Shown one piece after another: positions 1,290-49,833 of a stretch of 64,000 nt of DNA (positions are counted from its first letter, which is position 1; each line of letters opens with the position of its first letter). The notes under the pieces are model-generated. The model saw only the letters and a list, made by a program, of their open reading frames with translations, was not told where the DNA came from and did no database searches. This DNA is from Selaginella moellendorffii (lineage: Eukaryota; Plantae; Lycopodiophyta). Made by a program: the position numbers and the translations under genes. The DNA lies in contig NW_003314328.1 of NCBI RefSeq assembly GCF_000143415.4, positions 523,889-587,888 of the forward strand, read 5' to 3'.

Positions 1290-1555
1290 CCAAAATTTCA
1301 CCATGCACACAAAGTGTTAAAGCCAATCTACTTATATAGCCCAAATTAAAAGATCAATAGATGGACAATATCAAGGTAAAAAAAAAAATATTTTAGACAA
1401 AATTATCAGTAAATAAATCTTTCATTAGAATACAAAAGTATTCAAGTTATCATCTAGTAAATTAGGATTATAGAAACTATCAAGATTAACTATCATCAAT
1501 GAAACATAATGATAAAACTTAACCACCAAATATTATAAATAGTATGCCAAATAAC
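1290..1555 (-). mobile_element. Internal fragment of gypsy family 2 (same family as 46508-58635 and 60601-64000)
   Basis: ATTTCACCATGCACAC...AGTTATCATCT...GATAAAACTTAAC matches 61685-61910 directly and 56890-57025 in reverse complement. It abuts and truncates the LIN-like fragment. Confidence 0.65.
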
Positions 1556-2250
1556 TTATGATCATAACACTCACTTGCTCTTCTAGCATCTCAGACTCAA
1601 GGCATTGCAAGAGATACAGCACAGCCCCCTCAAACACCTTAACGATCACACAAAGATCAAAAGAGACAAAGAGAAAGATCACTGCTGCTCTTGGACCCCA
1701 GAGGGCCAGAGAGGTTCGACCCACCACCACCTGTTCCTGGAGGAGTTCCACGAGCGTGGGGACGAGCTGGAGAGCCTCGAGCTCTGGCAAATGGAGCTTG
1801 AGCAAGTAGAGAAGAACCACTGCCTGTGGAATCCTGCCTTGTTGGAGAATCTTGCTCACCCATCTGAGACCTGGGTCATAGTCTACTATCCCCCACCAAA
1901 CAGCCTCGTTGTTGTGGACGAACTCTGTCAGCAGGCACACCGCTGTTCTTTGCATTTGCAGGGACTTGGACATAACCATGAACTCCATCATGACATCGAT
2001 GACTACTTCAAGACGAGGACTGCCTTTGGTTTCCATCCAGACGCGGGCAATGACTGGAACAACTTGCTCGCAATCTTGGAGGTTCTCGACGGAACACAAC
2101 GTTGCAACGGCTTTCCTCAGATCCTCCATATTCTTCGGAGTGTCAGGCTTTATCAGTGTCTCAGCCAGGGTATCGTTTTGCACGAATTTTCCGTAGATGA
2201 GAAAGGCAAGGATTGGGTGCATGAAAGCAATACTTGTGTTAGCCACAAGG
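1556..2250 (-). pseudogene. Fragment of a LIN/CERBERUS-like U-box/ARM/WD40 E3 ubiquitin ligase (ARM region only), copy 1
   Basis: LRKAVATLCSVENLQDCEQVVPVIARVW...AVVLLYLLK...LVPTLVELL resembles the LIN ARM region (LCTSENLQECEAAVLxIARxW...AAxLIYQL...LIPSLV). In-frame deletions relative to copy 2, 3'-truncated by a TE fragment, no U-box or WD40 seen. Confidence 0.7.
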
Positions 2251-3104
2251 GACAGATGGGAAAGTAGAAGAAAAACTACTCACCTCACAGTCGAATAGGC
2301 TGGTGATCCATTGTCCTACAGAACCGTAACCAACAAAATGGACCGAAATGGTATGTATTGAGAAAAGAAAAATGCCAAGTTACCAAACATACCACGGACC
2401 GTTCATGTGATGGCACTCTCCAAGAGCCAAGTTCATTACCATTTGACATTGATGGCTTCTTTGTCTGAAAAGATAACGTTTATTCAGTAATAGTTACCTC
2501 CTTCGGTGTTGTTGGAGATTCCATAATATTTCCAATACTTGGGCAAACGTTTTCCTTTGCCTTCGTTTTGTTTCTACAAAAAGAAAAATGAACAAGAGAG
2601 ATCATGAAAAGTCTTACCGTTCAAACGGTGCCACCAAATTGCTCCTTGATAAAAACTCTCGCTGCACGTATTGAAGCCGAATTTGAGGAGTTTTCACGGA
2701 CGGAAACTTCAAGGTGCCGCCTTTGCGGTGTCGAGAAATCTCATACTGATAAAAACCTGCAAAAGCCTTCATGTTCTCGTCCAGAGATTCCTGATAAAGG
2801 CTCCTGAGAACATGTAGTCTTTCCTCACGCTCAAGGCACAGTTGGTCCAGAGGTCCCGAGCAAGCACTAGATGATGCCAAAAACCTTTCAAGTCTGTATA
2901 CAGCGCCTCAATCGGATAAGACGACTTCCGTGGAGAAATCTTTCCGGACGAAGGCACCTTCTGCATCGACGGATTTCCGGTCTCCTTGCTATACCCCATC
3001 TTGGAAAACCGAGGAAGAAATACGCTTCACGCCATGAGACGCGCGATTGAGAGAAATTCAAAAGAGTTCATGTAGCCGCAAGCCCTAAATTTGAATTTAG
3101 GGTT

Positions 3105-4659
3105 CTAGCGGTGGGAGGCACAGACAATGCGGGGCGACGCGACCGCGGCGGCGCCCGCGCCCGCGAGCTCCGCCATCTCGATCGGTTTCCCAAGCGGCGA
3201 TCGCCAGCTCCAGCGATGCAAGAGGTAGGCGAGGGTGAGCGTGACATGGGGCATGGCCAGCGGGATCCCGACGCAGCGGCGCCGCCCGGACGAGAAGGGC
3301 AGGAGATCGAAGTCGTTTCCCAGCACGCTGTGGTCGCTGCCCAGGAATCGTTCCGGAAGAAAGAGCTCGGGGTCGCTCCAGATGCTTGGGTCGTGATGGA
3401 TTGCCCAGATGTTCACGAGGACTGTGGTGTGGGCGGGGATCGTGTAGCCGGCGAGAGTTAACTCGCGATCGTTGTAGTGGGGGAGGCCCAGCGGCGCGAT
3501 TGGACGCTTCCGGAAGACTTCCTTGACGATGGCTTGGATGTAAGGCAGGTCTTTTAGATGCGACTCCTCCAAGGGACGGTCTCTTCCCACGACTCTGTCC
3601 AGCTCCTCGTGAGCTTTCTCCTGGACTTTCGGGTTTACTATCAGCTCCGAGATGGCCCATTCGATCGTCCCCTTGGACGTTCCAGTGCCGGCCAGCAGCA
3701 GATCCTGCAAGCATACGTGAGAAAGAATGAAGAACAAGGTAAGTTTTTCTTTCTACCTGGAGCAGTGCGATGATCTGGTCGTTGCTCAGCTTGTCTTCTC
3801 CTCCCAGAGTCAGCATCACGTCGACGAAGTCCCGGGGATTTTCCGGATCGAAGTCTTTCGTGTGCTCCTCGATGACTGCTTCCAGAAAGCGAGATCTTGC
3901 TGGTAGGACTTCATTCTTGAGTCGGTTTTGCGTCCCTCTGAGCGTGTCCAGCCATCGCATCGCAGGGATGTAATCACCGGCAAACAGCCTCCTGGATTCT
4001 TTCGCTTGGATCGCCCACGACGCCTTGTAGGCTTCGGCCTCGGGAGTGAGCGGCGTGTCGGTGCCGTAGAATTTCCTCCCGAACAACACGCACGTCATGA
4101 GGTTGGTGAAGTACTCGTGCAGCATGGAGCTGAGATCAAACTCGTGCCCGTCTTTTGCAGACGCCTCGACGATCTCTCCAAACGCTCCCACCTCCCTCTT
4201 GCGAGTGCTGGCAAAGTGGCTCACCTTGGAGGCCGTGAAGAGCTCTGTGCCGCACACTCGCCGCAGCATCTTCCATCGTTCGCCGTGCGGTGCGAAGATA
4301 AGGTCCTGGAAGTTGTGGCTAAGGAGGCGACCGATGGTGGAGAACAGGGGCCTGCTCGCAAACTCGACGTCGTGCTCCTTGAGGACTTGCCTCGCCATCT
4401 CCGGGCTGCTGATGATGGTGTGAGGCCGGACTCCCAGCCGGAGAGACATAACAGGGCCATACTTTCGAGCCATCTCGGCTAGGGAGCGATGCCGATAGGG
4501 GCCGAGCGAGAAGAGAGAGCCAACGAGGGGCCATGAGAAAGGACCTGGTGGGAAGTTCTTCTTGCTCCTCGCGCTGGTGGAGTGGAAGATCTGGAAGAGG
4601 AGTAGCAGGGCGGCCAGTGACGAGCAAATCCAAGTCCCCAAGAGCAGCAGCGCATCCAT
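3105..4659 (-). CDS. Cytochrome P450, CYP71 clan (A-type), copy 1. Exon 1 4659-3757, intron 3756-3705 (52 bp), exon 2 3704-3105; 500 aa
   Basis: N-terminal membrane anchor, PPGP hinge, WxxxR (WKMLR), I-helix AGTGTS, ExxR (KEVFR), PERF and heme motif PFSSGRRRCVG. A phase-0 GT-AG intron at the conserved A-type position (IIALLQ|DLLLAG) restores the frame. Confidence 0.96.
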
Positions 4660-5189
4660 GATGTTGCCCGGGTAGAAAAAAGAGATTGGTGGAGCTTTAA
4701 GTACGTCGAAGTGATGGATCGAAGGCTCCGGAGGGCGTGTTCGTCGAAGCATTCATGCTCGCACAAACTTCGGTTTTCGTGGAGAAGACGAAAGCTCTTT
4801 TGTTTTTCTATGGCTGGCTATGATAATTTATTGTAATATAGAAGATATTCTGAGAATAACCTAAGATCGCTTTTAAACTAATGACAATTAGGGTTTATGT
4901 GCTTTATTCGTTTCCATGTGTTAGAGATTCACGAACGTTTTGTCTCCTCCGGAGATAGATGTGATCAAGGAACATCTATCCACACCAGGATTTCATGGAT
5001 GACATAGAGCACATTAAGGGCACTAGAGAGCTAGAGACACTGTTTAAAAGTAGTAGATACACTGACATGGCGCTTGAGACAAAGTTGAGTCTCTCCTTTT
5101 TCTTCTTCTTACTTTGGGATTTTGGTGATCTCATGGCGATTGTGCAGAGGTTGCACAAAGCAGGAGCTGGTGTGCCAGAGCACCACCCG

Positions 5190-5760
5190 GCATTCAGCCG
5201 AACCAGATAGCGAAGAGGAAGTCCACGTACGTGTGGGCGACCATATCTTGCCTGAATCAGACCGCACGACATGGGTGGCCAAGGATGCAGCCAAAGCAGT
5301 TGGTCCTCCAATTGAGCTCTTCAACCAGGTTGAGAATTCAGGAGGCTCTGGCTGCCAGTGGATCCAAGATTAGGATCCGGTTTACAGCTGTTTAACTGGA
5401 GAAACTACCCAATCGTGCTCATGAGTTATATTGGTGAATTACTCCACGGCAAGATGCTTCTGATTCGAGATGGGAGCCAGGCTGCTGGAGATGGTGCAAG
5501 AGCTGCACAAGCAAGGGATAATCCATGGACTTCAGCCCCAGGAACATTTCTTACTGCAAGCAAGGCATTGGTTTTGGAGAGGTTCTACTGTCTGAATTGC
5601 CACATCTGTGTTGGACAACAATGGTAGCGGGGGAACCAGCCCTGTCAAGGACCTAGAGTTTGGCTCCATGAACTCAGTGTTCAATTGATCTTCAGCGGAA
5701 AGGTGGCAGGGATGGATTTGCCATGGTCAGGAGGAGGACAAGGACTCGGTGGTCTCAATG
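5190..5760 (+). pseudogene. Frameshifted protein kinase remnant, copy 1
   Basis: Across frames: PIVLMSYIGE (hinge-like), LLEMVQELHKQGIIH[x]DFSPRNI (catalytic loop), GGT, PVKDLE. Confidence 0.55.
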
Positions 5761-6289
5761 TATGGCATGTAATTTATAAATCACACGACATCTAACTGCG
5801 CGCCCCATGTTTCCAGCACTAAATATATGAGCTTTTTATATACATAGATGGCTCTTAGATGGGTTCGTAATGGAAACCATGAGTCATGCATGGTGCCAAC
5901 CTGAAGATGAGTCTTTGGTTAGGGTCAAGTCTCAAGGAATGTTGACTGTAGTGGCATCTTTGGATGTAGTAGTTACACTACATGGTGAGCTAATTTATAT
6001 CTTATCCCTGGTCATATGTCCTTAGTTAGGTTGAGTCCTAAAACTAGAGTATAAAGGTAGGGTGTTGACAAGTAAAGGAGATTCTAAGTAAGCTCAAATA
6101 ACTACATTATATATCTCTAACCCATGTTAGGTGAGGAGGCAAACAACAATTTGTCCTCCTTCAGTTTGCTTCCGAAAGTGGTTCTAGTATGGAAGAAGTG
6201 GTGGAGGACAATGTTTTGCCTGTAAGCAGAAATTTCATACTTATATCTGTAATTTCTTAATTTCTCATGCATTTGAGACTTCACTAGTC

Positions 6290-7250
6290 CAGACTCATTT
6301 GCCATCTGGTTACATCTCAAGATTCTTAAAACAAAAACTACAAGGTACCTAGCAAACTACTTCCAAATTACAAGGCCAACTTTGTGCAAATATATGTGCA
6401 TTGTCATTCTGAATTGGAGGGTGAAGGAGATATTGAGTCAGGTTCGGACTAATGTAGCTATAAATCATGCTGGCACAAACTGGGGTATTATCAACTCCTG
6501 GTTTAGTTGTTGAAATGCAGGATATAGATTTAGCTGATAGCAAGTTCACAAAGCATTGGCAATGCATGATCTAATAAAACAGAGGCACTTGTTTAAAATT
6601 CAACAACAAATTTACACTTACACGTTATGCTATATGGATTGTGAGTATATTTCATTGTATTTGTGAAGACTTAAACATTCACCAGGGTAACATATTGCAA
6701 GCTTATGGATTCATATTCATGCTTTGATATGTGGGGGGACTTATATAGTAACTTGTAAGCTATCAACCATAAAACAAACACATACAATTTTTAACACATA
6801 TGTATGGGTTGTATGCAGATTTGGCTGGCCTAAATGCATTAGGAGTGACAATGCTCCTGAACATAATATGGTAGAAAATGATATGGAATGTTCTTGGGGT
6901 CCTTAAAGCAAGAGTTTTATTCATGGGACATCAACAAGAAACTAGGTCTACATTTAATATTTTGTTGTGCATGTTCATCACCACCCTTGTAGCACATCAA
7001 GCACTTCTGGTGTGAATTATACAAGTTTGTGGTGTAGAGTCTATAGAGTATATTGGCATATTGGATGTTTCCAATGCATGACACAAGTACAGTCTGCAAT
7101 ATGTTTTTATGCCATATCTTGCCAAAGATATACCTCATTAGGTTGTTATTTGGAAGTTACACAAAATGCATCCATATCAGTGTGGTGGGTTCTTTAGGCC
7201 ATCTCACATATTAACAAACGTGTTCTAGCCCCTAGAGTGCAAGCTTGGGT
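6290..7250 (+). mobile_element. Decayed IS3EU-like (eukaryotic IS3/IS481-related, integrase-core) DDE transposase gene with a 47-bp intron (6946-6992), copy 1
   Basis: In order: HTH-like TRYLANYFQITRPTLCKYM; GYRFS..QVHKALAMHD; CKL..GF.IHALI.GGT; RFGWPKCIRSDNAPEHNMVENDME; SFIHGTSTRN(Q) | GT..AG | HIKHFWCELY (RIERFWRELY after C>T/G>A decay); EYIGILDVSNA.HKYSLQYVFMPYL; W.LH. Confidence 0.7.
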
Positions 7251-8520
7251 AAGCCTTTCCTTTGAAGATGATATGTATAAACTTTCACACCACTTGTAGA
7301 ATCATTTGGCATATCAATCTTCAAGGGACATAGAAGACATGATAGGTTTGATGCTTATGAATGTTGAAGGTGCAACACTCCCTTAGATATTACTTTCCTT
7401 TTTTCTATTACCTAAAGTATGTTTAATGTCTTAGGAACTCATTGCTGTGAGGAATTGGGCTCTTCTAATGCACTAGAAAGGTCTTAATCTTGATGAGCAA
7501 TATCTCCTACACTTGGATTTGTCTATTGAATGTGCAATAGCTAACGTTGAAGGTGTGGCTCTTCCAATTTATATTAATACTAGTCTTCCTTTTGCAACAC
7601 CAGTCAAGAAGTGGGAAAAAAAAATTCTTTCTCCCCTATTTGCCCTGCTTATGCAGGAAAAGCATAAATAAGGGTTGTTTGCTATGCTCTAACCACATGA
7701 GTGTGATTAATTATTAAGCCAAAAATATTTCATCTTTTTCTAGGGTTTGAACTATTGTGTGTTGTTTTTTTAAGGAACTAGAGCTTTGCTTTTACACTCT
7801 AGTCACAACACTCCATGGTAAGCCTTTTGCATTTCCTCTCATCTCCATGGCAAATCTTTTCTCTCTGTTTTTTTTTCCCCATAGGCAAGAAGTAAAGACC
7901 CAGCATAAATACATGAAGGTCAAGGTATTTCCCCCCAGAGTAGTGCTAGAAACAATGCTCTAGGTGATACTAAAGAGCCTCATGATCTTCCCTTTATGTC
8001 CAATTTGCAAACCACATATGTGGGCTTAGTTTCAATAGAGCATGCAAGGGTGCAACTTGTTAATGCACCACCTTGAGCAGTTAACAACCCTCCACCAAAT
8101 ATCTCCTTCCAATCAAACCATGAGTAGCTCTCCACTAGGATCTAGAAATCTACTCCAAGGCTTAGGTGCTCTACAAGCCTAAAGAGCCCAATTGATTGAT
8201 AGTGCTATTGATAGCACCCCAATGCAATTGCTTTAGATGCAATAAATACCACAATTGGTGGGTAGCACCCCAATGCAATCACTACAATTGCAACAAATAC
8301 TAACACTAACAAGTAGTATAAACTCCACTAAGTAGTAGTAGCTCCTCTATAATCTAAAGCTTGAGTCTGCCACCCAATTCATATTGAGGGGAGTCTAGAG
8401 TCATCACACCACCCCCACTACATTCTAGATGCTTTGTTCTACCTCCTTCCAATCTGGCTCAAGGGGAGGACTAACTCTCCATGGATTCAATCTATATTCT
8501 TCCTCGAAGAGAGCTAGTAC

Positions 8521-8748
8521 TATAAGTGCTTTCCAAATATTTTTAATTTTAGTTCTCAATTACATCACCCCACCCTTAAATCGTCCATTTGGATCTTTAT
8601 TCTCAACTTCTTCCCAAAGCTTGCCAATTGAATCACTAGTGCAATATGTTATTGTTTGCTCAATAATATATAACCAACAATATTTTATTTTTTTATGTCC
8701 ATAATTGTTGTCTCCTTTAGTTGCCACTATCTAGACATGCTAACAACA
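8521..8748. mobile_element. Small insertion, probable decayed solo LTR (228 bp)
   Basis: Absent from the duplicated copy (near 26425). Flanked by the imperfect 5-bp duplication AGTAC/ACTAC. Termini TATAAG...AACA. Confidence 0.4.
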
Positions 8749-9788
8749 ACTACTAGAGCCTCTCCTCTTGGTGTGGGAGGCCTAAACGCTAGTCCAAGGT
8801 GATAGGAGCTAATAGTGGTGAGAGCTCCTTAAGTGTGTTATAAATCTCATGGAGAAACAAATTGCTATTCCTGTAATTTATACTTTGTGCCTCTATAGGA
8901 AATAAAGGGAGCCAATAATGAAGATCCTACAATTTAAAGATGTCCTCTTGCAACTTCTAGAATGCATGCCATAGGAGGAATTTACCTCAAAGCTTGTTTT
9001 CAACTAAGCATTGTTTAATATACTATCTAAGAGCACCTTTCAACATTCTAATGCAAGTTTTTATTATTGGATCATTTGTTTGGTGATCAAGACAATCCAA
9101 TAGGCTGATCCCCCACCTACTTTGCAAGGGCTGAGATGAGTTCTAAGCCAATATTAATCACCACCACCAACTCCCATAAAACAACTATTGGCAATAGACA
9201 CAACTAAAACACTAGTAATGGAGAGGCAAGAGCCTCTTACTACTGACAATGATGTCAATGAGGAAGAGGAAGTTGATGAGGAAGAAAATGATAGGCCACA
9301 CAATGAGCAAGATGAAGTAGAGCCTTCTTTATCTTAAAAATTCCCATCTTAAGGAGCCGATACTAGTAAGTCTTTCTTTCCTTCCTCATGCAAGTCCTCA
9401 CCAAAGGCACCATCTACTCTTGCAATGCAGCCTATGGTAGTCTCAGATAGTGATGATGGTTTTGGGCCAGAAGATCCTATAGAGCCCACCAACTTTTAGT
9501 GACAAGGACTACTAAACACCACTCCCACTAGTAAAAATGGTCAACTCAATAACAACTCAAGTGTAAATGGTCTAGTTGTGAAGCACATGTTTAATGTATA
9601 TTATTATTGATTTGTGCAATTTTGAGTTGAAGCAAAGTGCATGGATAGATGCTGCCATGGCTTATAACCACACATTGGAGTTGGCCATGCAACCCAAGGC
9701 TATCAATAACATGGTTAATTTCCAAGAAATTGGAGCTATAGAGGATGTAATGTCAGTACTAAAGCTTGCAATAGTGAATGATCTTGAC

Positions 9789-12700
9789 CTAATGGCACCT
9801 TAATAATACACCTTTCAACTGGCTCACATAAAATATCGGATGAATTTTCACCCCAGCTAGCAGCCGGACCCGATAAGCTACTTTACCAATGTACTCCAAC
9901 ACTTCATATGGACCAACATATCGATGGGAAAGTTTGTCACTTTTCCCTGTCCGTAAAGGCACCAAGATGTTTTGCCACTCACTTGACGGAAAGATCACTT
10001 GCATGAAGATGAGATCACCTACTTTATATTCCCGGAATTGGCAATGCTCATTAGCAAACTTCTCTATTCTATCTTAAGTTGCTTGCAAATTCTATTTGCA
10101 CACCACCAAAATCTCATCAAGTTCTGTGGCCAAGTCAGTCGCCTCTGAATCAAGCTTGTCTTAAACATCCTTACTCAAATACAATCCTTGTTCAGGGATG
10201 CCTTCCAAACATAGCAAAGTAAGGACTTAGCTTTGTTCCACTGTGTTGGCTATTTTTGTAAGCAAATTGCACCAATGGAAAATATAGATCCCACTGTCTT
10301 TGCCTTTTACCAACGCTACAATGTAGTATATCCTCCACCACCTAATTCACATGCTCGATTTGCCCATTTGTCTAAGGATGATCTCCACTTGAGAGTTTCA
10401 AAGTCACTTGCATAGCTTTCATAAAGCTCATCCAAAATCCATTGGTGAACTTTCAATCTCGATCACTAATGATATCTTGTAGCAAACCAAAATCAGGAAA
10501 AACTTTTTCCAAATAGACTATAGTTAAGTCTGAGGCAGTGATAGTCTTTCAAAGAGCCAACAATTGCACATACTTCATCAATTGATCCACTATGACCCAT
10601 ACTTGCTCCTTTTGCTTTTATGTTCGCGGCAAATAAGTGATGAAGTGCATAGAGATACTATATCAACGGCTCTAAGGAATAGGTAAAGGTTAGTCCCCTC
10701 AACTTTTCCCATGGCACCTTAACCTGTTGATAGAGCTCACATGATTTACAATAATCGAGGATATCGATCTTCATATTCCTCCAATAAAAATTGTGCTTAA
10801 TCAACTCATATGTCTTCTTCCCCCCAAAATGACTAGTTTCTAGATGATCATGACAGTGGAATAAAATTTGAGTAATTAATATATCCACCCGTGGCAAATA
10901 TACATGGCCATTATAGAAGAGAATCCTATCCACTAATGAGAAAGGGGCTTCCATCTGATCTTGCAAAGAGGCCACATCAGCATCTTGAACTTGAGTACGC
11001 TCAACCAATTGCCCAAACTTGTTGACCACTTTACTCAAATGATGACAAAACTGTGTTTGTAACATCGTCACATGACAAACATGAAATAAAGCATTCGCCA
11101 CCACATTCAATTTTCCTAGACGAGGAAGAGGAAACTCCCCAAACTCCATGAGTTTGACCATCTAACGAACTTATTTAGTGTTCAACTCTTTCTGTGTGAA
11201 AAGATACACAAGTGGTTTGTGATTCGTTAACACCACAAACACTACACCATAAAGATAGTGCTGCCACATCTATAAAGCATGAACAATAGAGAGTAACTCT
11301 TGTTCATATATGGAATAATGTTGTTCTGCAGGATTCAAAATTCGACTCTTATATGCAATAAGCTGTCCCTTTTGCATGAGAACTCCTCCCAATGCATAAC
11401 CACTGGCATCACATCTCACCTCATAAAGTTTTGATGGATCAGAAATGTGAAGCATTGGAGCCTCGCTCAACAATCATTTCAGCACCACAAAACTCTCCTT
11501 TTATGGCTTCTTCCATTTGAATGGCACGTTCTTGTGCAACAACTGTGTCAAAGGAATAACCACCTCCGCAAACTTATGTTAGAAATGTCGGTAGTAACTA
11601 GCCATTCCAAGGAAATTGAGTAACTCAACCATTGTAGTTGGTGTAGGCTAGTTCTCCACCACAACCACCTTCCTTAGATCAGTCTTAACACCCTTAGATG
11701 TCACAATATGACTTAGATATTCCACCTTCGACTTTGCAAATTCATATTTGCTCTTCTTCATATAAAGTTTGTTATTACAGAGTAATGAAAGAACCTTGTG
11801 CAAATGCATCTTATGTTCTTCCATATTCTTGCTAAAAACAAGAATATTGTCCAAGAGAATCTCCACAGACTCATGAAGATAACACCTAAATACCTTCGTT
11901 ATCAACTGAGTAAATATGGCTAGTGCATTCGTCAAACCAAATGGTATAACTGTAAACTCAAAATGTCTAAAGCTTGTGTTGAATGCTATCTTGGAGATAG
12001 ATGCATCATCCATTGCAATCTGATGATATCCACTCCTCAGATCAATCTTGGTAAACACTCGTGCTTCACTAAGCTTGTTTAGGATATCATCCACACGCCC
12101 CTATTTTCTTGTTCAAGGCACAGTAGTCAATACACATCTGTATTGAATTGTCCTTCTTCTTCACAAGCAAGACTGGAACACCAAATAAAGACTTACTTGG
12201 TTAAATAAATCCAAACTCAAGTAACTCCTTGACTTCTCGTTGAACTTCTTGCTCCTTTGCATAACTTAACCGAAATGGATGCCAATAAATTGGCTATGTC
12301 CTTAGCTCCAATGTAATCCTATGCTCCACACCTTGTATTGGAGGCAACCTATGAAGAAGTTCAGATGGAAAAGCATCGGAAAACTCTTGGAGTACATCCT
12401 ATACTGTTGCTTCTCCCCCACATGTTCCTTGGCATAAACAGTAAGTAACTTGAAAATGTTTTTCCATTACAACAAACCCACTTCAAAGATATAGTGTAGA
12501 GCATAACAACTCCCTCTCCAAACCACACATCTTTAACACCACTGTATTCCAGTGAGACACGCTTAATACTCCATTTTATCTCCGGATCCACCTTCACCAA
12601 CCATGGCATCCCAAGAATGAGATTCACACGATAGATATCCGTGAGATAAAAAGTTTCTACAAGTGTGGTTTTGCCAACCAACACTTTCAACCCCTCTACA

Positions 12701-14242: not shown

Positions 14243-15272
14243 GGAGGCCATAAAAGAATGTTATACATAAAGCAATGTAGAGGAATGTAAGTGTTTTGAA
14301 AAATTCTCTTATGCATTGTAGTCACACAGCCTTTTTTCTTACTAGGCCAGGGGTTTGTGTTGGCATTTACATATGCCAAGGTAGAGCACAACATTACACT
14401 AAAAAGACAAAGTAAGGAAGTTTTAATAGATTTACATTGCAATGACTATTCCCAAGTGGTTTGCAAACTATGTTTTGTTGCCTAGCTTTTATTCCAAGCC
14501 TTTAAATGCAATGCAATGCCTCTCGACCTTGCACAATTGCCACACTTGCTATTGAAATAGGCAAAATCCCTACTCCAAATGATAGGCAACTGGTGTGTTT
14601 GAGATGGATTTCAAGTCTTGTACCTTGGGATATGAGATGCTATCAATGGAGGAGGATGCCTGCTAAAAGGCCATTGATGACATCCTGGAAAACCTACCCA
14701 TCACACACCTTAGTAATTCAAGGTTGGTGAACATCATGGTCAACTACTTAGAAAAAGTGGACTCTTGCATATGGCCAATGGTGTGAAAAACACTATTCCA
14801 TGAACTGGGAGAAATAATGTGCACTTTATCATCATGGAGGCATGAAGAAGACCACACTATAGTGGGCAATTGATGGGGGCTCTCACAAATATAAAGATGG
14901 ACACCCTTTTACAGTTTTTTCAAGTACGGAATATCATCCTACCAAAGGGAATTCTTCAAGTGCTTATGGTTTGACAGTAGTGTGAGTAAGTAGTATCAAT
15001 TTTGGCTCAAGGAACTAATTGAAAATTGGCAAATAGTAGTTTTTATTTGCCTTACTGAGAGGTGTAGTAATGCAACCATTCTCTTATATCACATTGGAAG
15101 TATAAGCAAAAGAGTGAGATGACAATGGTGCACTATAAGAGGAGTTATATGAAACTAATAAAGCCATGAGCATTTTTGGATTGAAAGGGGGAGTTCTAAA
15201 AGCACTTTAAAACCCACCCTCCATTGTCCCACAGTAGATAAGACACTAAAAATTTATATATTAGAGAACTAA
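14243..15272 (+). repeat. Duplicated ~1.1-kb decayed coding-like segment D, copy 1 (direct repeat of 19726-20855)
   Basis: GGCCATAAAAGAATGTTATA...TTAGAGAACTAATA is shared with 19726-20855 at roughly 85-90% identity. Family not identified. Confidence 0.8.
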
Positions 15273-19398: not shown

Positions 19399-19725
19399 GG
19401 CGCAGCTCTTTGCCCATATCTAACCGTGCTTGGATCTCTGAGTTCCAAGCATTCCAGCATCCACAAAGCTACACACACGAAAAGAGAAGAGTTGGCGGTC
19501 ACTCGAGTGAGAGAAAAACCCTAGGCATTGGCTTTCCATGACTCAAGCAGTGTAACGCCTCAAACACTTTATACTACTAGTTCTCGAGGTTTATAATAGA
19601 GAATGTAATGCTTCCATCATATAGGAGGACATGAAGGAAATTAAAATTAGCAAATCTATTAGTTTTATAAATAAAATTTCTAAGTTTCACACCTTGATTT
19701 GGTCAATAACAACCATCAATGTATG

Positions 19726-20855: not shown

Positions 20856-21142
20856 TAATTCGATTAAGGATTCGGCTTCAATAAGGAGGAATTTGGTGGA
20901 AGCTGATTCAAGTCTGTATACAGCACCTCAACCGAATAAGACGACTGCTGTGGAGAAATCTTTCCGGACGAAGGCCTTCTGCGTCGACGGATTTCCGGTC
21001 TCCTTTCTATACCACTCCTTAGAAAACCGAGGAAGAAATACGCTTCACACCATGAGACGCGCGATTGAGAGAAATGCGAGTTCATTAGCCGCAAATAGCT
21101 CCCCTTAAGATAACTTCAAGCCCTAAATTTGAATTTAGGACT

Positions 21143-22686
21143 CTAGCGATGGGAGGCACAGACAATGCGGGGCGACGCGACCCCGGCGATGCCCGCGCCC
21201 GCGAGCTCCGCCATCTCGATCGGCTTCCCAAGCGGCGATCGCCAGCTCCAGCGATGCAAGAGGTAGGCGAGGGTGAGCGTGACATGGGGCATGGCCAGCG
21301 GGATCCCGACGCAGCGGCGCCGCCCGGACGAGAAGGGCAGGAGATCGAAGTCGTTTCCCAGCACGCTGTGGTCGCTGCCCAGGAATCGCTCGGGGAGAAA
21401 GAGCTCGGGGTCGCTCCAGATGCTTGGGTCGTGATGGATTGCCCAGATGTTCACGAGGACTGTGGTATGGGCGGGGATCGTGTAGCCGGCGAGAGTTACC
21501 GCGCGATCGTTGTAGTGGGGGACGCCCAGCGGCGCGATTGGACGCTTCCGGAAGACTTCCTTGACGATGGCTTGGATGTAAGGCAGGTCGTTTAGATGCG
21601 ACTCCTCCAAGGGACGGTCTCTTCCCACGACTCTGTCCAGCTCCTCGTGAGCTTTCTCCTGGACTCTGGGGTTTACTATCAGCTCGGAGATGGCCCATTC
21701 GATCGTCCCCTTGGACGTTCCAGTGCCGGCCAGCAGCAGATCCTGCAAGCATACGTGAGAAAGAATGAAGAACAAGGTAAGTTTTTTCTTTCTACCTGGA
21801 GCAGTGCGATGATCTGGTCGTTGCTCAGCTTGTCTTCTCCTCCCAGAGTCAGCATCACGTCGACGAAGTCCCGGGGATTTTCTGGATCGAAGTCTTTCGC
21901 GTGCTCCTCGATGACTGCTTCCAGAAAGCGAGATCTTGCTGGTAGGACTTCATTCTTGAGTCGGTTTTGCGTCCCTCTGAGCGTGTCCAGCCATCGCATC
22001 GCAGGGATGTAATCACCGGCAAACAGCCTCCTGGATTCTTTCGCTTGGATCGCCCACGACGCCTTGTAGGCTTCGGCCTCGGGAGTGAGCAGCGTGTCGG
22101 TGCCGTAGAATTTCCTCCCGAACAACACGCACGTCATGAGGTTGGTGAAGTACTCGTGCAGCATGGAGCTGAGATCAAACTCGTGCCCGTCTTTTGCAGA
22201 CGCCTCAACGATCGCTCCAAACGCTCCCAGCTCCCTCTTGCGAGTGCTGGCAAAGTGGCTCACCTTGGAAGCCGTGAAGAGCTCTGTGCCGCACACTCGC
22301 CGCAGCATCTTCCATCGCTCGCCGTGCGGTGCAAAGATAAGGTCCTGGAAGTTGTGGCTAACGAGCCGACTGATGGTGGAGAACAGGGGCCTGCTCGCAA
22401 ACTCGACGTCGTGCTCCTTGAGGACTTGCCTCGCCATCTCCGGGCTGCTGATGATGATGTGAGGCCGGACTCCCAACCGGAAAGACATAACAGGGCCATA
22501 CTTTCGAGCCATCTTGGCCAGGGAGCGATGCCGATAGTCGAGCGAGAAGAGAGAGCCAACGAGGGGCCATGAGAAAGGACCTGGTGGGAAGTTCTTCTTG
22601 CTCCTCGCGCTGGTGGAGTGGAAAATCTGGAAGAGGAGCAGCAGGGCGGCCAGTGACGAGCAAATCCAAGTCAGCAACGCATCCAT
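21143..22686 (-). CDS. Cytochrome P450, CYP71 clan, copy 2. Exon 1 22686-21796, intron 21795-21743 (53 bp), exon 2 21742-21143; 496 aa
   Basis: Same motifs as copy 1, about 97% nucleotide identity, two small in-frame deletions at the N-terminus, open frame after splicing. Confidence 0.95.
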
Positions 22687-23219
22687 GATGTTGCCCGGGT
22701 AGAAAAAAGAGATTGGTGGAGCTTTAAGTACGTCGAAGTGATGGATCGAAAGCTCCAGAGGGAGTGTTCGTCGAAGCATCCATGCTCGAATGAGATCTGG
22801 TGGAGACGAAACTCCCAAGTTGTGCAAACAGTGCAACGAAAGGCACGACGAAACTTCGGTTTTCGTGGACGAGACGAATTGTTTTTCTATGATTAATATA
22901 GATATTCTGAGAATAATGTATTTTACCTAAGGTCTGGGTTTATGTGCTTTATGTGTTAGAGATGCTCCCGAACGTTTTGTCTCCCGAGGAGATAGATGTG
23001 ATCAAGGAACATCTATCCACACCAGGATTTCATGGATGACGTAGAGCACATTAAAGGCACTAGAGAGCTAGAGACTGTTTAAAGTAGTAGACACATTGAC
23101 ATGGCGCTTGAGACAAAGTTGAGTCTCTCCTTTTTCTTCTTCTTACTTTGGGATTTTAGTAATCTCGGCTGGATGAAGGTGCAACCTCTGCACAATCGCC
23201 ATGAACCAGATAGCAGCCC

Positions 23220-23790
23220 CCACGGAAGAGGAAGTCCACGTACGTGTGGGCGAGCTCCAGCTCCCATATCTTGCCTGAATCAGACAGCACGACATAGTTT
23301 TCATCCTCGGCTGAGTGAGAAGGTTTCGGCTTAAGCAAGGCGGCCAAGCATGCAGCCGAAGCAGTTGGTCCTCCAATTGAGCTCTTCAAGAATTCAGGAC
23401 GCTCTGGCTGCCAGTGGATCCAAGGTCAGGATCCCCAAGATCCTGTGGTCAGGCTGGGCTTTACAGCTGTTTAACTGGGAGCCAAGCTGCTGGGGACGGT
23501 GCAGGAGCTGCACAAGCAAGGGATAATCCACGGACATCAGCCCCAGGAACGTTGCTTACCGCGAGCAAGGCATTGGTTTGAAGAGGTTCTCTGGATTGCC
23601 ACATTTGCGTCGGAGGACAACGGTAGCGGGGGAACCAGCCCTGTCAAGGATCTGGAATTCGGCTCCATGAACTTGGTGTTCTGCAATGCAATTCATGCTT
23701 CAGCGGAAAGGTGGCTGGGATGGACTTGCCATGGTCAGCTGCTGTGCAGGAGGAGGACAAGGACTCGGTGGTCTTACTGTATGGCATGCA
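23220..23790 (+). pseudogene. Frameshifted protein kinase remnant, copy 2
   Basis: VQELHKQGIIH[frameshift]DISPRNVAY...IATFASED..GGTSPVKDLE. Confidence 0.55.
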
Positions 23791-24339
23791 ATTTGCGAAA
23801 TCTGACTGTGATGCCACCAGTTGCCAGCACTCAATTTCCGATTGGATGTCAAATATATGAGCTTTTTATATACATAGATGACTCCCGTAATAGAAACCAT
23901 GTCATGCATGGTGCCACATGCATTCATGGCATCCACCATATCATCATATGTTCCACACCTGAAGATAGGGTTGGGTCTGGCATCTTTGGATGTGAGGGGT
24001 TTTCGTAGTTACACTACATAGTGAGTTAATTTATGTCCTATCTCTGGTCATGTGTCCTGTTTGTAGTTTGGCTGAGTCCAAAAACTAGAGTATAGAGGCA
24101 GGGTGTTGACAAGCAAAGGAGATTCTGAGTAAACTCAAATAACTACATTATATATCTCTAACCATGTGAAACACTAGGTGAGGAGGCAAACAGCATTTTG
24201 TCCTCCTTCAGCTTTGCTTGTTCTAGTGTGGAAGTGGTGGAGGACAATGTTTTGCCTGTAAGCAGAAACTTCATACTTATATCTGTAATTTCTTAATTTC
24301 TTAGGCATTCAAGACTTTCTTGTGAACAAAAGGATTCAC

Positions 24340-25200
24340 TAGTCCAGATACATTTGCCATCTAGTTACATCTCAAGATTCTTAAACAAAAACTACAAGGT
24401 ACCTAGTAAACTACTTCCAAATTACAAGGCCAACTTTGTGCAAATTTATGTGCATTGTCATTCCGAATTGAAGGGGTGTATACAACAGAGTACCAACAAA
24501 GGAGATATTGAGTCAGGTTTGGAGTAATGTAGCTATAAATCATGCTGGCACAAACTGGGGTATCATCAACTCCTGGTTTAGTTATTGAATAGTAGGATAT
24601 AGATTTAACTGACAGCAAGTTTATGAAATATTGGCAATGCATGATCTAACAAGATTACAATAGAGGCATCTGTCTAGAATTCGAAGATGAATTTACACTT
24701 ATGTGCTATGCCTTATGGACTGCGTATATTTCATTGTATTTGTGAAGACTTAAACATTCATTGTGGCAACATATTGCAAGCTTGTATCATATGGATTCTA
24801 CATTTATGCTTTGATATGTGGGGGAACTTATATAGTCACTTGCAAGCTATCAACCATAAAACAAACACATATGATTTTTAACACATATGCACTGTTGTAC
24901 ACAGATTTAGTTAGCCTAAATGCATTAGGAGTGACAATGCTCTTGAACATAATGTGGTAGAGAATGATATGGAATGTTTTTGGGGTCCTCAAAGCAAAAG
25001 TTTTATTCGTGGGACATCAACAACTCAGTCTACCTTTAATATTTTATTGTGCATATTCATCACCACTTACCTTGCAGCACATCAAGCACTTCTAGTCTCA
25101 TTAGGTCGTTATGTGGAAGTTACAAGAGGTGCATCCATATCAATGTGGTGGGTTCTTAGGCCATCTCACATACCAGAAAATTTATTCTAGCCCCTAGAGT
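24340..25200 (+). mobile_element. Decayed IS3EU-like transposase, copy 2
   Basis: HSLWQ..YCKLVSYGFYIYALICGGT; IRSDNALEHNVVENDMECFWGPQSKSFIRGTST; acceptor TTGCAG followed by HIKHF. Confidence 0.68.
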
Positions 25201-27074
25201 GTGAGCTTGGGTAAGCCTTTCCTTTGATGATAATATGCATAAACTTTCACACCACTTGTAAAATCATTTGACCATTATCTTCAAGGGACATAGTGCCAGG
25301 TTTGATGCTTATAAGTGCTGAAGGTGCAACACTCTCTTAGGTATTACTTCCCTTTTTTCTATCATATAAAGTATGCTTGATGTCTCAGGAACTTGTTATT
25401 ATGAGGAATCAGGCTTTTCTATTAACATAGGTCTTCCTTTTGCAACACCAGTCAAAGTAGTGGGCAAAAACAATTTTTTTGGTTTTGGTTTCTCTTGTTT
25501 TAGAGTGTTTGCTTTGATGTGGGAAAACCATAAATAAGGGTGGTTTGCTATGCCCTAACAACATCAAATCATGTGATTAATTATTAAACCAAAAGCATTT
25601 CATCTTTCTCTAGGGTTTGAACTATGTGTGTTTTTTTAAGGAACTAGAGCTTCAATATTACACTTCAGTCACACACTCCATGGTAAACCTTTTTCATTTC
25701 CTTTCATCTTTATGGCAAGCCTCACCTCCATTTTTATTTTCCCATAGGCAAGAAGTAAAGACTCAACATAATACATGAAGGTGGAGGTATTTGACCCTAG
25801 AGTAGTGCTAGAAACCATGCTCTAGCTGATACTAGCAAACCTCACAATCTTCCTTCTACCTCCAATTTGCAAACCACACATGTGGGCCTAGTTTCAATAA
25901 TTCTGTCTGTGCATAAGTATGTAGGGGTGCAACTTGTCAATACACCAACTCGAGTAGTTAATAACCCTCCACCAAATATTTCCTTCTAATCAAGCAATGA
26001 GTAGCTTTCCACTAGGATTTGGACATCTATTCTAAGGCTTGGGTGCTCTACCGGCCCAAAGACAATCAATTAGTAGTGCCACTGATAGCACCCCAATGCA
26101 ATTGCTTTAGATGCAATGAACACCACCACTTGTAGGTATGGGTAGCACCCAATGCAATCACTACAGTTGGAACAAACACCAACACTAACAAACAATATAC
26201 TGCATAGAGGCATAGGGTCATCAACTCTGTTATATAGCAATAGCTCCTCTATAATCTAGAGCTTGAGTTTGCCACTTAATCCACATTGAGGGGAGTCTAG
26301 AGTCATCACACCACCCTTACTACATTCTAGATGCCTGGTTTTGCCTCCTTCCAATTTGGCTTAAGGAGAGGACCAATTTTCTATATCTCCATAGATTCAA
26401 TCCATATTCTTCTTTAAAGAGAGCAACTACTAGAGCCTCTCCTCTCAGTGTGGAAGGCCTAAATGCTAGTCCAAGATGTTGGGAGCTATTAGTGGTGAGG
26501 GCCCCTTGAGTGCAACTTTGTCCTATGAGAATGAATTTTATTAAGAAACACATTGTTATTCCTATAGCCTAAACTTTGCATCTCTATGGGAAATAAAGGG
26601 AGCCAATAATGAAGATCCTAGAACTTAAAGATGTCCCCTTATGACTTCCAGAATGCATGCCATAGAGGGAATTTATATCAGAGTTTACTTTTAGTTAGAC
26701 ACCATCCAATATGCTATCTAAGAGCATCATAAAAGGCATATTTCAACATTCCAACTATGCAAGTATCTAGTATTGGAGCATTTATTTAGTGATTAAGACA
26801 ATCCAATAGGTTGACCCCCCACCTAGACACAACAAAATATAGGCTTGCCTTATATACAACTTGATCATCAATTTGCAATAAATCAAACCACTATCAATTC
26901 ACTATGATTTTCCTTTACAACATTATGCTTCATATAACCCAACAGCATTAAATTGCTTACCAACAGTAAATGTGTTCTCTAATGTAGAAGGAAAAGTGGC
27001 TAAAAGATGGGTGTTATAATTACAATTGTTTGTGGTTATTTTCACCCACTACAATATATGTTTTTTGAAAGGGT

Positions 27075-27225
27075 TTGTAGTGCATGTAATCATGGGATGA
27101 AATTTGGATATACTATCACTATAAATTTTTAGAACTTTGGGGGATAAATAGGGATAAAATAGCTATTAAAGGCTCTTTTATCAAGCAATTACCCTTTTTT
27201 CAGTTAGTTTAAGGGGAGAAAAATA
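27075..27225. repeat. Dispersed AT-rich repeat inside a copy-2-specific insertion (~26825-27240); inverted copy at 59028-59175
   Basis: CATGGGATGAAATTTGGATATACTATCA...ATTAAAGGCTCTTT..CAAGCAATTACC matches 59028-59175 in reverse complement. Confidence 0.7.
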
Positions 27226-27745
27226 GAGTGCACTATAAGAGTTATGAGCCAATGTTAATCATCAAGCCCCCACCACTAACTTCTATAGAGCAAATACTTA
27301 ATGGACACAATTAAAACATCAGTATTGAAGAGCCTCTTACTACTGATGACAATGTTAATGAGGAAAAAAATGATGGGCCACACAATGAGTAAGATGAAGC
27401 AAAACCTTTTTATCTTAAGAATTCCCACATCCAAAGAGCTAGTTTTAGTAAATTTCTCTTTCCTTCCTTATGCAAGTCCTCACTAAAGGCCCCATCTACT
27501 CTTGTAGCACAACCCATGGTAGTCTTAAATAGTGATAATGGTTTTGGGCCAGAAAATTTCATATAGCCACCACCACCTTTTTGTGATAAAGGCTACTAGA
27601 CACTAGTCCTTCATCTTCACCAATGTAAATACTTGAGATATGGGAATAATAAATTAATTAGGGTTTAGACCTTTGCTTAAATACAAGAATGGATCCCACT
27701 ACTGGAAATGCTAACTCTATAACAACTCAAGTGTAAGTGGTTTAG

Positions 27746-38500: not shown

Positions 38501-39061
38501 GATCAAGACCCACAAGCCCGACCACTAAGTCCCACGGTCCTCTGGGACTTCCTCACCACACAACTGTGTCCTTGGTCACTACCCCAGAGGACTGCTCCTC
38601 TTCCTTTCCACAGTCTGGGCCTTTGGGACAACATTTCGGAACACCGTGGCCTTACACGAGCCACCTAGGTACTCTCCTCGCCTTCTGCCCTTGGGTGCTC
38701 TAGCCATGGGCTTAGAGCGGGTTCCGTTGAGCCACACCAGGTATCCAAGTAGGTAGTGCCACCCACACTTGGACTGGGAGCATCGGCCAGTCGATCTCCC
38801 GGGGGAACTAGAGCCGGCTCTTGAACACTTCACCAAGCTACCCCGCTTGTCGGTCTGTGTTCACTCTAGTCTTGGACTTCCCAGTGGGCAGCACATCACC
38901 CAACACTGGGTCTGGCCTTCCTGGGCCAAACTGGCCTTTCCTGGCCAAACTGGCCTTTCCTGGCCAAACTGGCTCCACTGCAGTCCTCCCCCTACTATAC
39001 TTTTGGAGCTCACCAAACCCCCCAGGGTCTGGGAGACGAACGCTTTGGGCTTTCACCCTCT

Positions 39062-49801: not shown

Positions 49802-49833
<32 letters not shown>

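What the first reader, a model, noticed from the sequence alone, without database searches (positions are those of the whole stretch)
6290..7250. Intron-containing IS3EU-like DDE transposase fossil in a land-plant genome (two copies)
Seen: frame-jumping translation of both copies (second at 24340-25200) gives a collinear motif series: HTH, GYRF..QV.KAL..D, SLW...CKL..GF.IHA.I.GG, FGWP..IRSD...E...V...M, SFI.G.S..NQ, xIxxFW, GILD..N..H...LQYVFMP, W..H. A 47-bp GT-AG intron splits NQ|RIERFW. Knowledge: this order matches the animal/fungal integrase-core transposases (SLWHIDGxxKL..W..IHG.IDG; YG.P..VRSD; SFI.G.S..NQRIERLW), which I associate with the IS3EU superfamily, described mainly from animals and fungi. 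Inference: this is a plant-resident lineage of that superfamily, either ancient or horizontally acquired, with host-sized introns. It is invisible in the ORF track.
Basis: partly seen in the sequence, partly recalled or inferred. Interest (0 to 1): 0.8.

Follow-up and report, generated by a model that had tools for sequence, protein, structure and literature searches.

The report
Dead GingerRoot (IS3EU) transposon relic, duplicated
These are two decayed, silent remains of one jumping gene of the GingerRoot/IS3EU kind, already described from spikemosses in 2019, and the second copy arose when a block of DNA holding a neighbouring P450 gene was duplicated.

Summary
Window 6250-7610 and 24300-25350 (+) are collinear, stop-ridden remains of an integrase-core (Pfam rva_4) DDE transposase. 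tblastn with a Selaginella moellendorffii protein gives E=3e-50.

The superfamily call also holds. The core motifs match the published IS3EU/GingerRoot alignment, best the S. lepidophylla GingerRoot SL_GR-020 (about 52% by eye). Younger S. moellendorffii relatives have TIRs ending TATGG..CCATA, as fungal IS3EU do.

The novelty claim does not hold. GingerRoot was described from Selaginella, other lycophytes and bryophytes in 2019 and merged with IS3EU in 2023.

The intron is real: it has the same position in all copies and is 47-65 nt long. At least two introns are conserved in the core and probably five in the gene.

The "two copies" are one insertion. They share flanks, a complete P450 gene, two CGA>TGA stops and the catalytic E>K change, so a dead element was copied by a 6.6-kb segmental duplication. 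Three RNA-seq runs show no reads on the relic, while the adjacent P450 is expressed.

Side observations:
- The younger S. moellendorffii family makes 5-bp TSDs, not 6-bp.
- It carries a second gene with a HECT-like end.

The scan noted similar relics elsewhere in this genome (s1-420005, s1-388306), both unchecked.

The parts
5761..5780 (+). Left terminal motif of relic copy 1 (TATGGCATGTAATTTATAAA)
   Evidence: It matches the left ends of the younger S. moellendorffii elements (TATGGCRTGCAATTYRTAAA). It lies about 490 nt upstream of the transposase remains, as in L002.
6253..6640 (+). Copy 1, exon with the HTH-like stretch and the first catalytic D. GAT is at 6637-6639. CGA>TGA stops shared with copy 2 lie at 6511-6513 and 6535-6537.
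   Evidence: P0013 aa 37-179 hits 6253-6642 at 50% identity.
6641..6690 (+). Copy 1, intron A. It is phase 1 and starts GTGAGT. The acceptor AG has decayed to AA.
   Evidence: L001-L004 and L006 have a 58-59-nt GTGAGT..TAG intron at the same position. The public gene model P0001 splices HMD|SYCKL.
6691..6945 (+). Copy 1, exon with the second catalytic D. GAC is at 6847-6849 in IRSDNAPEHN. The exon ends N-TAG, formerly NQ. It has a frameshift near 6703 and a stop at 6904-6906.
   Evidence: Pfam rva_4 E=5e-4 on 6691-6903; tblastn; alignment.
6946..6992 (+).
   Evidence: All copies have an intron at the same codon boundary, 56-65 nt long in the younger ones. Models P0005 and P0006 splice there.
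6993..7249 (+). Copy 1, exon starting HIKHFW (formerly RIEHLW). The catalytic E is now K (AAG 6999-7001). It continues through GILD..LQYVFMP..W.LH.
   Evidence: P0013 aa 184-275 hits 6993-7249. The alignment shows a GTAAG donor at 7250.
7318..7608 (+). Copy 1, remains of the C-terminal exons (..NVEGATL.. and ..EGLNLDEQYLLHLDL..LPIYI..)
   Evidence: P0005 aa 204-285 hits 7318-7611, E=1.7e-24. P0013 aa 281-353 also hits here.
8960..8973 (+). Right-end-like motif GAATGCATGCCATA, status uncertain. Its homologue in copy 2 is at 26651-26664.
   Evidence: It matches the right ends of the younger elements. No TSD pairs it with the 5761 end: the flanks are CAATG and GGAGG. Weak ORF2-like matches lie beyond it.
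9407..9794 (+). Weak remains of the N-terminal part of the element's second gene (ORF2), copy 1
   Evidence: P0012 aa 108-208 hits 9407-9767, E=3.5e-6. P0013 aa 743-793 hits 9642-9794. The remains are cut at about 9790 by a minus-strand gypsy integrase fragment.
23780..23799 (+). Left terminal motif of relic copy 2 (TATGGCATGCAATTTGCGAA)
   Evidence: Its upstream flank is homologous to that of copy 1.
24305..25349 (+). Copy 2, transposase remains. D1 GAC is at 24718-24720 and D2 GAC at 24933-24935. Intron B is 25029-25077. The E>K codon AAG is at 25084-25086. Shared stops lie at 24586-24588 and 24610-24612. About 120 nt are deleted relative to copy 1 (7011-7133).
26775..27587 (+). Copy 2, weak matches to the linker and the N-terminal part of ORF2. 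Copy 2 ends with the duplicated block at 27609.
   Evidence: P0013 aa 554-625 hits 26775-26966, E=2.6e-8. P0012 aa 69-139 hits 27327-27587, E=0.008.
2887..9525 (.). Duplicated block, first copy. It holds a complete two-exon P450 gene (3105-4752, minus strand) plus the relic.
   Evidence: Self-blast. Identity profile: 98% over the P450, about 90% over the relic, about 82% further right. Pfam p450 E=2.5e-32. RNA depth is up to 528 with a 52-nt intron at 3704-3755.
20907..27609 (.). Duplicated block, second copy (P450 remains at 21679-22836, minus strand, plus relic copy 2)
14324..15026 (+). Diverged fragment of the HECT-like ORF2. A second fragment lies at 19902-20604. Whether either belongs to this relic is unresolved.
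   Evidence: P0012 aa 448-668 and 432-666, E=1.7e-14 and 8.7e-17. The fragments lie in 1-kb direct repeats 14279-15274 and 19832-20857.

Best explanation
**What it is.** A fossil of a cut-and-paste DNA transposon of the IS3EU/GingerRoot superfamily, in a spikemoss genome that is most likely Selaginella moellendorffii.

**How a live element would work (inferred from the superfamily).** The element carries a multi-intron gene for an HTH plus RNase-H-fold DDE transposase. The transposase binds the terminal inverted repeats (TATGG..CCATA), cuts the element out and pastes it in with a short staggered cut. The younger relatives seen here leave a 5-bp TSD.

**History of this copy (shown).** The copy inserted once, beside a P450 gene. 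It then died. It acquired two CGA>TGA stops and the catalytic Glu became Lys (RIE>HIK), all of them C>T or G>A changes. A 6.6-kb block holding the P450 gene and the dead element was then duplicated about 18 kb downstream. Both copies have since diverged by about 10% and gained private frameshifts and deletions.

**Present state.** It is not transcribed in the three RNA-seq runs examined, and I infer no present function.
For: **Homology.**
- tblastn E=2.9e-50 and 1.7e-44 to S. moellendorffii rva_4 proteins.
- Pfam rva_4 on stop-free pieces. Related proteins pass the gathering score at 41-67 bits.

**Superfamily.**
- The published alignment of IS3EU and GingerRoot cores shows hWHxD..KL / G.IDG / RSD / NQRIE.
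- SL_GR-020 shares HMDSY.KL, GAT..IVAC, IFN.YA.AV, A.EHN and NQRIEH.WR..FE with P0001 and P0005. That is about 52% identity over about 107 aligned positions, counted by eye.
- Younger copies L001, L002, L005, L006 and L010 have a roughly 54-nt TIR, TATGG..CCATA ends and TSDs. These are the same termini as fungal IS3EU (TAYGG..CCRTA, PMC12730594).
- The same left-end motif is at 5761 and 23780.

**Introns.** Two introns keep their position between the relic and the younger family.

**One insertion, then duplication.**
- The collinear repeat 2887-9525 / 20907-27609 includes the flank of the left end and a whole P450 gene.
- The stops and the E>K change are shared.

**Silence.** There are 0 RNA reads over 4800-8990, against depth up to 528 on the P450, in X18-X20.
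Against: - No TSD and no secure right end could be found for the relic itself. The CCATA motif at 8973/26664 has non-matching flanks, and weak ORF2-like matches lie beyond it.
- The 6-bp TSD that defines GingerRoot and most IS3EU is not seen in the related S. moellendorffii copies (5 bp).
- No formal tree with Repbase IS3EU or SL_GR sequences was built. Placement rests on motif comparison with a published alignment.
- The identity gradient along the duplicated block (98>90>82%) is not fully explained. The extra ORF2-like repeats at 14279-15274 and 19832-20857 show that the region's history is more complex than one duplication.
- The species is inferred, not given.
Confidence: 0.85

Rival explanations
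1. The two copies are two independent insertions of the same transposon family.
For: They are only about 90% identical and each has private deletions.
Against: - Homology runs without a break through the left terminus into the flank and through a complete host P450 gene.
- Both copies share two nonsense mutations, the E>K change and several indels.
- Elements with shared flanks are also seen repeated elsewhere in this genome (L004, L008, L010).
Confidence: 0.05
2. It is the integrase of a decayed LTR retrotransposon (Ty3/gypsy or Ty1/copia), or a Ginger1/Ginger2 element.
For: - Pfam rve also matches the related proteins weakly, at 31.6 bits, just under its cut-off.
- The window is full of LTR-element debris. 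A gypsy integrase lies at 9789-11161 on the minus strand.
Against: - rva_4 scores higher than rve in every related protein.
- There is no Integrase_H2C2/HHCC match upstream. An HTH-like stretch is there instead.
- Related copies are bounded by TIRs ending TA..TA, not by LTRs or TG..CA ends.
- No RT or RNase H lies next to it.
- The core motifs match IS3EU/GingerRoot rows, not the Gypsy, BEL or Ginger rows of the published alignment.
Confidence: 0.03
3. It is a pseudogene of a host gene domesticated from such a transposase, not a transposon remnant.
For: It has several introns of host size, lies next to an expressed gene and has no TSD of its own.
Against: - A conserved terminal motif lies at the expected distance upstream.
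- The nearest relatives are multi-copy units bounded by TIRs and TSDs.
- All fetched relatives are themselves degenerate.
Confidence: 0.04

Closest known systems
GingerRoot DNA transposons of Selaginella lepidophylla (Cerbin, Wai, VanBuren & Jiang 2019, PMC6839031), in particular the SL_GR-020 type
   Same: - The host is a spikemoss.
- The DDE core is the same, about 52% identical to SL_GR-020 by eye over the published core.
- There is no HHCC finger.
- The TIRs have TA..TA termini.
- The elements are several kb long (3.9-12.9 kb reported; about 8.5 kb in L002, L005 and L006).
- Most copies are decayed and silent.
   Different: - TSDs are 5 bp in the five S. moellendorffii insertions read here. 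The paper reports 6-8 bp and used that as a search criterion.
- The recognisable TIR is about 54 nt, against 100-150 bp.
- The held text of the paper describes neither transposase introns nor a HECT-like second gene.
- The window's relic shares only about 65% nucleotide identity with the younger S. moellendorffii family.
IS3EU superfamily of Repbase (animals and fungi; Kojima & Bao 2023 PMC10045372; Kojima 2025 PMC12730594)
   Same: - The motif series is the same: WHxD..KL, G.IDG.SR-like, RSD, NQRIE.
- The fungal termini TAYGG..CCRTA are identical in form to TATGG..CCATA here.
- The Pfam family is rva_4.
- IS3EU and GingerRoot form one clade at 99% bootstrap in the paper.
   Different: - The usual TSD is 6 bp.
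- The accessory genes in fungi are alpha-kinase and TET/JBP, not HECT-like.
- The Selaginella cores have GAT in place of DGFSR after the first D.
Ginger1 and Ginger2/TDD transposons and Ty3/gypsy integrases
   Same: All have an RNase-H-fold DDE integrase-type catalytic core.
   Different: - Those carry HHCC (and GPY/F) motifs and TG..CA ends.
- Here there is an HTH-like N-terminus, TA..TA ends and rva_4 rather than rve as the best model.

Membership tests
IS3EU/GingerRoot superfamily | DDE transposase core with the IS3EU/GingerRoot motif series (hWHxD..KL; second D in R.D; NQRIE with the catalytic E) | tested here: met
   Window translations and S. moellendorffii relatives were compared with the published alignment rows IS3EU-1_CVi, IS3EU-6_CGi and SL_GR-020. 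In the relic the E is mutated to K in both copies.
IS3EU/GingerRoot superfamily | Terminal inverted repeats ending 5'-TA..TA-3' (TAYGG..CCRTA in fungal IS3EU) | tested here: met
   L002 has a 54-nt TIR at 87% complementarity with ends TATGG..CCATA. L001, L005, L006 and L010 have the same ends. The window has the left-end motif at 5761 and 23780. Its right end is uncertain.
IS3EU/GingerRoot superfamily | 6-bp target site duplication (6-8 bp in GingerRoot) | tested here: not met
   The younger S. moellendorffii copies have 5-bp TSDs. GAGAG, TTTTT and GCTCA are perfect. ACTAA/ACTAT and CAAAT/CAAAC match at 4 of 5. The sixth base never matches. No TSD is recognisable for the window relic itself.
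IS3EU/GingerRoot superfamily | No HHCC zinc finger upstream of the core; an HTH-type N-terminal region instead | tested here: met
   No Integrase_H2C2 or other zinc-finger hit appears in P0001, P0003 or P0013 or in the window pieces. There are only weak HTH_17/HTH_22 hits (E=0.12-0.28) at the ..YLACYLRISKPTLYKYM.. stretch.
IS3EU/GingerRoot superfamily | Phylogenetic placement inside the IS3EU/GingerRoot clade | not tested
   Repbase and SL_GR sequences exist here only as text of a paper's supplement. No tree was built. Placement rests on the motif comparison and on Pfam rva_4.
Pfam PF24764 (rva_4) | Score at or above the gathering threshold (26 bits) | tested here: inconclusive
   The window pieces score 20.3 and 15.1 bits, below the cut-off, because only stop-free fragments were scanned. 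The related proteins P0001, P0003, P0005 and P0006 score 41-66.8 bits, above it.
LTR-retrotransposon integrase (Ty3/gypsy, Ty1/copia) | HHCC zinc-binding domain, neighbouring RT/RNase H, and flanking LTRs | tested here: not met
   None of these is present in the relic or in L001-L010. TIRs are found instead.

The most novel reading that the evidence does not exclude
The Selaginella moellendorffii branch of GingerRoot/IS3EU, to which this relic belongs, would be a distinct variant of the superfamily. It makes 5-bp rather than 6-bp target duplications. Its transposase gene has at least two, probably five, ancient conserved host-size introns. It carries inside its TIRs a second gene with a divergent HECT-type ubiquitin-ligase C-lobe. 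This would be a new kind of transposon accessory protein, perhaps used to interfere with host silencing or protein turnover.
Probability: 0.4. Interest if true: 0.45.

Novelty: new member of a known kind. Interest (0 to 1): 0.22.

Why it matters
It matters little in itself. It is a silent, mutated remnant of a transposon superfamily whose presence in spikemosses, other lycophytes and bryophytes has been published.

It is still useful in three ways:
- It corrects the annotation. These 'Integrase core domain-containing' gene models in S. moellendorffii are GingerRoot/IS3EU debris.
- It shows that a dead transposon can appear multi-copy through segmental duplication alongside a P450 gene.
- It gives leads on the S. 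moellendorffii family: the 5-bp TSD, the conserved introns and the HECT-like second gene. These would refine the definition of the superfamily if confirmed genome-wide.

Tried and rejected
- **Remote protein relatives.** phmmer of the 71-aa piece against 1.84 billion representatives and three word-index searches returned only S. moellendorffii proteins. No direct E-value link to animal, fungal or other plant proteins was obtained. The link to IS3EU/GingerRoot came from the published alignment instead.
- **Literature on the Pfam family.** A search for PF24764/rva_4 found nothing relevant.
- **Ends of the relic.** An inverted-repeat search across both duplicated blocks found no long TIR. The short motifs were found only after the ends of the younger copies were known. 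The pairing 5761/8973 has no TSD.
- **ORF2 fold.** The AlphaFold model of the ORF2 C-terminal 418 aa failed (mean pLDDT 30, 4-row alignment), so no fold search was run. A profile search of PDB sequences was blank.
- **Spacer coincidence.** The 2.9-kb spacer between the ORF2-like repeat and copy 2's left end matches in length the spacers in L008 and L010. A test for homology found none, so this is a coincidence.
- Exons were searched one at a time by reference. In one search two adjacent exons of locus L001 were translated together only to check the frame against the public model P0001.

Full report
**1. Observation**

No ORF longer than 76 aa covers it, so it is indeed invisible in an ORF track.

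The series is not chance:
- Protein P0001 of Selaginella moellendorffii (aa 170-359) aligns by tblastn to 6316-6885 at 49% identity, E=2.9e-50, and to 24385-24891 at E=1.7e-44.
- P0013 carries the match on to 7608 and 25349.
- Stop-free pieces, searched one by one by reference, hit Pfam rva_4 (PF24764, 'Integrase core domain') at E=5e-4 and 0.019. Both are below the gathering score because the pieces are short.
- phmmer of the 71-aa piece 6691-6903 against 1.84 billion representative proteins found five proteins. All are S. moellendorffii gene models named 'Integrase core domain-containing protein'.

**2. What the gene looked like**

I aligned both window copies with a better-preserved copy (L001). 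I also located the motifs in seven fetched loci. This gives the anatomy.

- An exon holds an HTH-like stretch (..TKTTRYLANYFQITRPTLCKYM..) and ends at the first catalytic Asp (..YMD, GAT 6637-6639).
- A phase-1 intron follows, starting GTGAGT (6641-6690; 58-59 nt in the younger copies).
- The next exon reads S-YCKLVSYGF..ICGG..IV.CKL.. through the second Asp (IRSDNAPEHN, GAC 6847-6849) to ..SFI.GTST.NQ.
- The next exon starts RIEHLW in the younger copies and HIKHFW in both window copies. It runs through GILD..LQYVFMPYL..W.LH to a GTAAG donor at 7250.
- Remains of two further exons lie at 7318-7608.

Copy 2 keeps the true frame, and copy 1 has a small deletion there. The public gene models P0001, P0005, P0006 and P0013 splice at these same points.

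The introns are of host size. The RNA-verified intron of the neighbouring P450 gene is 52 nt.

**3. Which family**

The library holds the GingerRoot paper (Cerbin et al. 2019, PMC6839031). It reports:
- a DNA transposon discovered in Selaginella lepidophylla;
- 100-150-bp TIRs, TA..TA ends and 6-bp TSDs;
- a DDE transposase without HHCC;
- presence in lycophytes, bryophytes, fish, corals and molluscs.

Kojima & Bao 2023 (PMC10045372) show that IS3EU and GingerRoot form one clade (99% bootstrap). Their supplementary alignment prints the cores. The IS3EU rows read LWHIDGNHKL / IHGGIDGYSR / VRSDKGGEN / SFIAGRSVHNQRIERLW.

The GingerRoot row SL_GR-020 can be set beside the S. moellendorffii proteins:

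| SL_GR-020 | S. moellendorffii (P0001, P0005) |
|---|---|
| LWHMDSYDKLAV | LYHMDSYCKLVS |
| YGFRFHGIIDGATRFIVACSV | YSFYVHAIICGATHYIVACKL |
| ..IFNNYARAV.. | ..IFNTYAQAV.. |
| RLRADAAREHN | IRSDNAPEHN |
| ..FLKGPSTHNQRIEHQWRDFFEKF | ..FIRGISTCNQRIEHLWRELFERV |

By my count this is about 52% identity over about 107 aligned positions. That is far closer than to the animal rows. The window copies carry the same series in decayed form.

An ESM-Atlas look-up of P0006 returned only rva_4 clusters from fish, molluscs and ascomycetes among its best named hits. This fits the published range, but it is a lead only.

**4. Ends**

I fetched ten S. moellendorffii loci around the related gene models. The younger family is 92-93% identical between copies and about 8.5 kb long.
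- L002 has a 54-nt TIR, TATGGCGTGCAATTCATAAAAGGGTG.. / ..CACCCTTTTATGAATTGCATGCCATA.
- The form TATGG..CCATA is exactly the TAYGG..CCRTA reported for fungal IS3EU (PMC12730594).
- The flanks give 5-bp duplications: GAGAG (L001), TTTTT (L002) and GCTCA (L005) are perfect. ACTAA/ACTAT (L006) and CAAAT/CAAAC (L010) match at 4 of 5. The sixth base never matches.
- So one defining feature of GingerRoot, the 6-8-bp TSD, is not met by this family. The paper used 6-8 bp as a search criterion and so would have missed 5-bp families.

In the window, the left-end motif stands at 5761 and 23780, about 490 nt upstream of the coding remains. A right-end-like GAATGCATGCCATA stands at 8973 and 26664. Its flanks do not repeat those of the left end. 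Weak but collinear matches to the linker and to the second gene of the younger elements lie beyond it, at 9407-9794, 26775-26966 and 27327-27587. I therefore treat the true right end as lost or unresolved.

At about 9790 the relic abuts a minus-strand gypsy integrase fragment.

**5. Why there are two copies**

Self-comparison shows one collinear direct repeat, 2887-9525 against 20907-27609.
- It contains a complete two-exon cytochrome P450 gene on the minus strand (Pfam p450 E=2.5e-32).
- It also contains the sequence between that gene and the relic's left end, and the relic itself.
- Identity is 98% over the P450, about 90% over the relic and about 82% further right. Transitions make up about 75-85% of the mismatches.
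- Both copies share two CGA>TGA stops (6511-6513 / 24586-24588 and 6535-6537 / 24610-24612), the RIE>HIK change that removes the catalytic Glu, and several indels.

So a single, already dead insertion was copied by a segmental duplication. Each copy then decayed further. Copy 1 gained a frameshift near 6703. Copy 2 lost about 120 nt and the intron's 5' G.

The higher identity over the P450 points to selection or gene conversion there. I did not resolve which.

The extra 1-kb direct repeats 14279-15274 and 19832-20857 hold diverged ORF2-like sequence. They show that the region has had more than one rearrangement, and this remains unexplained. Elsewhere in the genome, element plus spacer is also repeated with identical flanks (L004, L008, L010).

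**6. Activity**

Three RNA-seq runs with the same species label were read at about 12% each (1.38 billion letters per run).
- They give depth up to 528 on the P450, with its intron spliced.
- They give no read at 95% likeness or more anywhere in 4800-8990.
- DNA contigs of the same organism cover the relic.

The relic is silent in these samples. All younger copies I read also carry stops or deletions.

**7. Organism**

The organism is not given. Several lines point to S. moellendorffii or a very close relative, by inference:
- All protein relatives are S. moellendorffii.
- Other repeats of the window match S. moellendorffii loci at 80-90%.

The main text of the GingerRoot paper does not mention S. 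moellendorffii.

**8. Side finding**

Inside the TIRs of the younger elements lies a second gene (P0012 747 aa, P0014 733 aa; fused to the transposase in models P0003 and P0013). Evidence that its end is HECT-like:
- The sequence reads ..FPRFSTCTREVFFPLTY..
- It hits Pfam HECT positions 213-301 of 306 at E=2.2e-4, 21.4 bits, under the 23.9 cut-off.
- UniRef names P0012 'HECT domain-containing'.
- 27 of the 30 nearest ESM-Atlas clusters are HECT (score 0.94).

Evidence that failed:
- An AlphaFold model failed (pLDDT 30).
- A PDB profile search was blank.

Neither the GingerRoot paper nor a library search links HECT to these transposons. This is a lead, not a result.

**9. Verdict**

- The superfamily assignment is supported.
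- The claim of an undescribed plant lineage is not supported.
- The 'two copies' are one insertion duplicated with its neighbourhood.
- Two unchecked first-reader notes (s1-420005, s1-388306) report similar relics on other pieces of this genome.

Noticed in passing
L002:9784-18324, L005:9784-18241, L006:9640-18401, L001:8744-13159, L010:9483-17596: The younger S. moellendorffii GingerRoot-type elements have 5-bp target site duplications. Three are perfect and two match at 4 of 5. The published GingerRoot and IS3EU value is 6 bp.
   Followed up: partly
L005:13548-16250 (P0012), L002:12206-16209 (P0014); diverged pieces in window 14324-15026 and 19902-20604: A second gene inside the TIRs ends in a divergent HECT-like C-lobe (..STCTRE..). 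The Pfam HECT hit is E=2.2e-4, below the cut-off. UniRef names it 'HECT domain-containing'. ESM-Atlas neighbours are HECT. The fold model failed, and no paper in the library links HECT to IS3EU/GingerRoot.
   Followed up: partly
window 3105-4752 (-) and 21679-22836 (-): These are tandemly duplicated cytochrome P450 genes, 98% identical over 1.8 kb including the intron, while the flanks are 82-90% identical. This suggests gene conversion or recent homogenisation. The gene is strongly expressed, but most RNA reads are only 95-99% alike, so they come from an allele or a paralogue.
   Followed up: partly
window 17425-18775 and 30788-32138: A 1351-nt inverted repeat is 100% complementary. It lies inside a 4.2-kb inverted pair (15260-19414 / 34369-30121) that is otherwise about 88% identical. 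This could be very recent conversion or an assembly artefact.
   Followed up: no
window 14279-15274 and 19832-20857: 1-kb direct repeats (83-93% identical) flank the 4.2-kb segment 15260-19414 and contain ORF2-like sequence. The second repeat abuts the second P450 block. Their origin is unresolved.
   Followed up: partly
window 1533-2246 (-) and 34832-35560 (+): These are inverted fragments of an E3 ubiquitin ligase LIN-like ARM-repeat gene (Pfam ARM_LIN_2nd, E=1.5e-32 and 6e-25).
   Followed up: no
window 38046-45755, 49101-56891: These are large inverted and direct repeats with internal 12/23/35/46-nt tandem arrays (39036-39700, 44960-45600, 49157-49830, 55145-55990). The same family occurs in S. 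moellendorffii loci L002 and L003 at 80-85% identity.
   Followed up: no
L004, L008, L010 (GL377568.1, GL377614.1): Element plus a roughly 2.9-kb spacer recurs with identical flanks (aaacaagc|TATGG and CCATA|caaacaaa). This means copy number has grown by tandem or segmental duplication rather than by transposition.
   Followed up: partly
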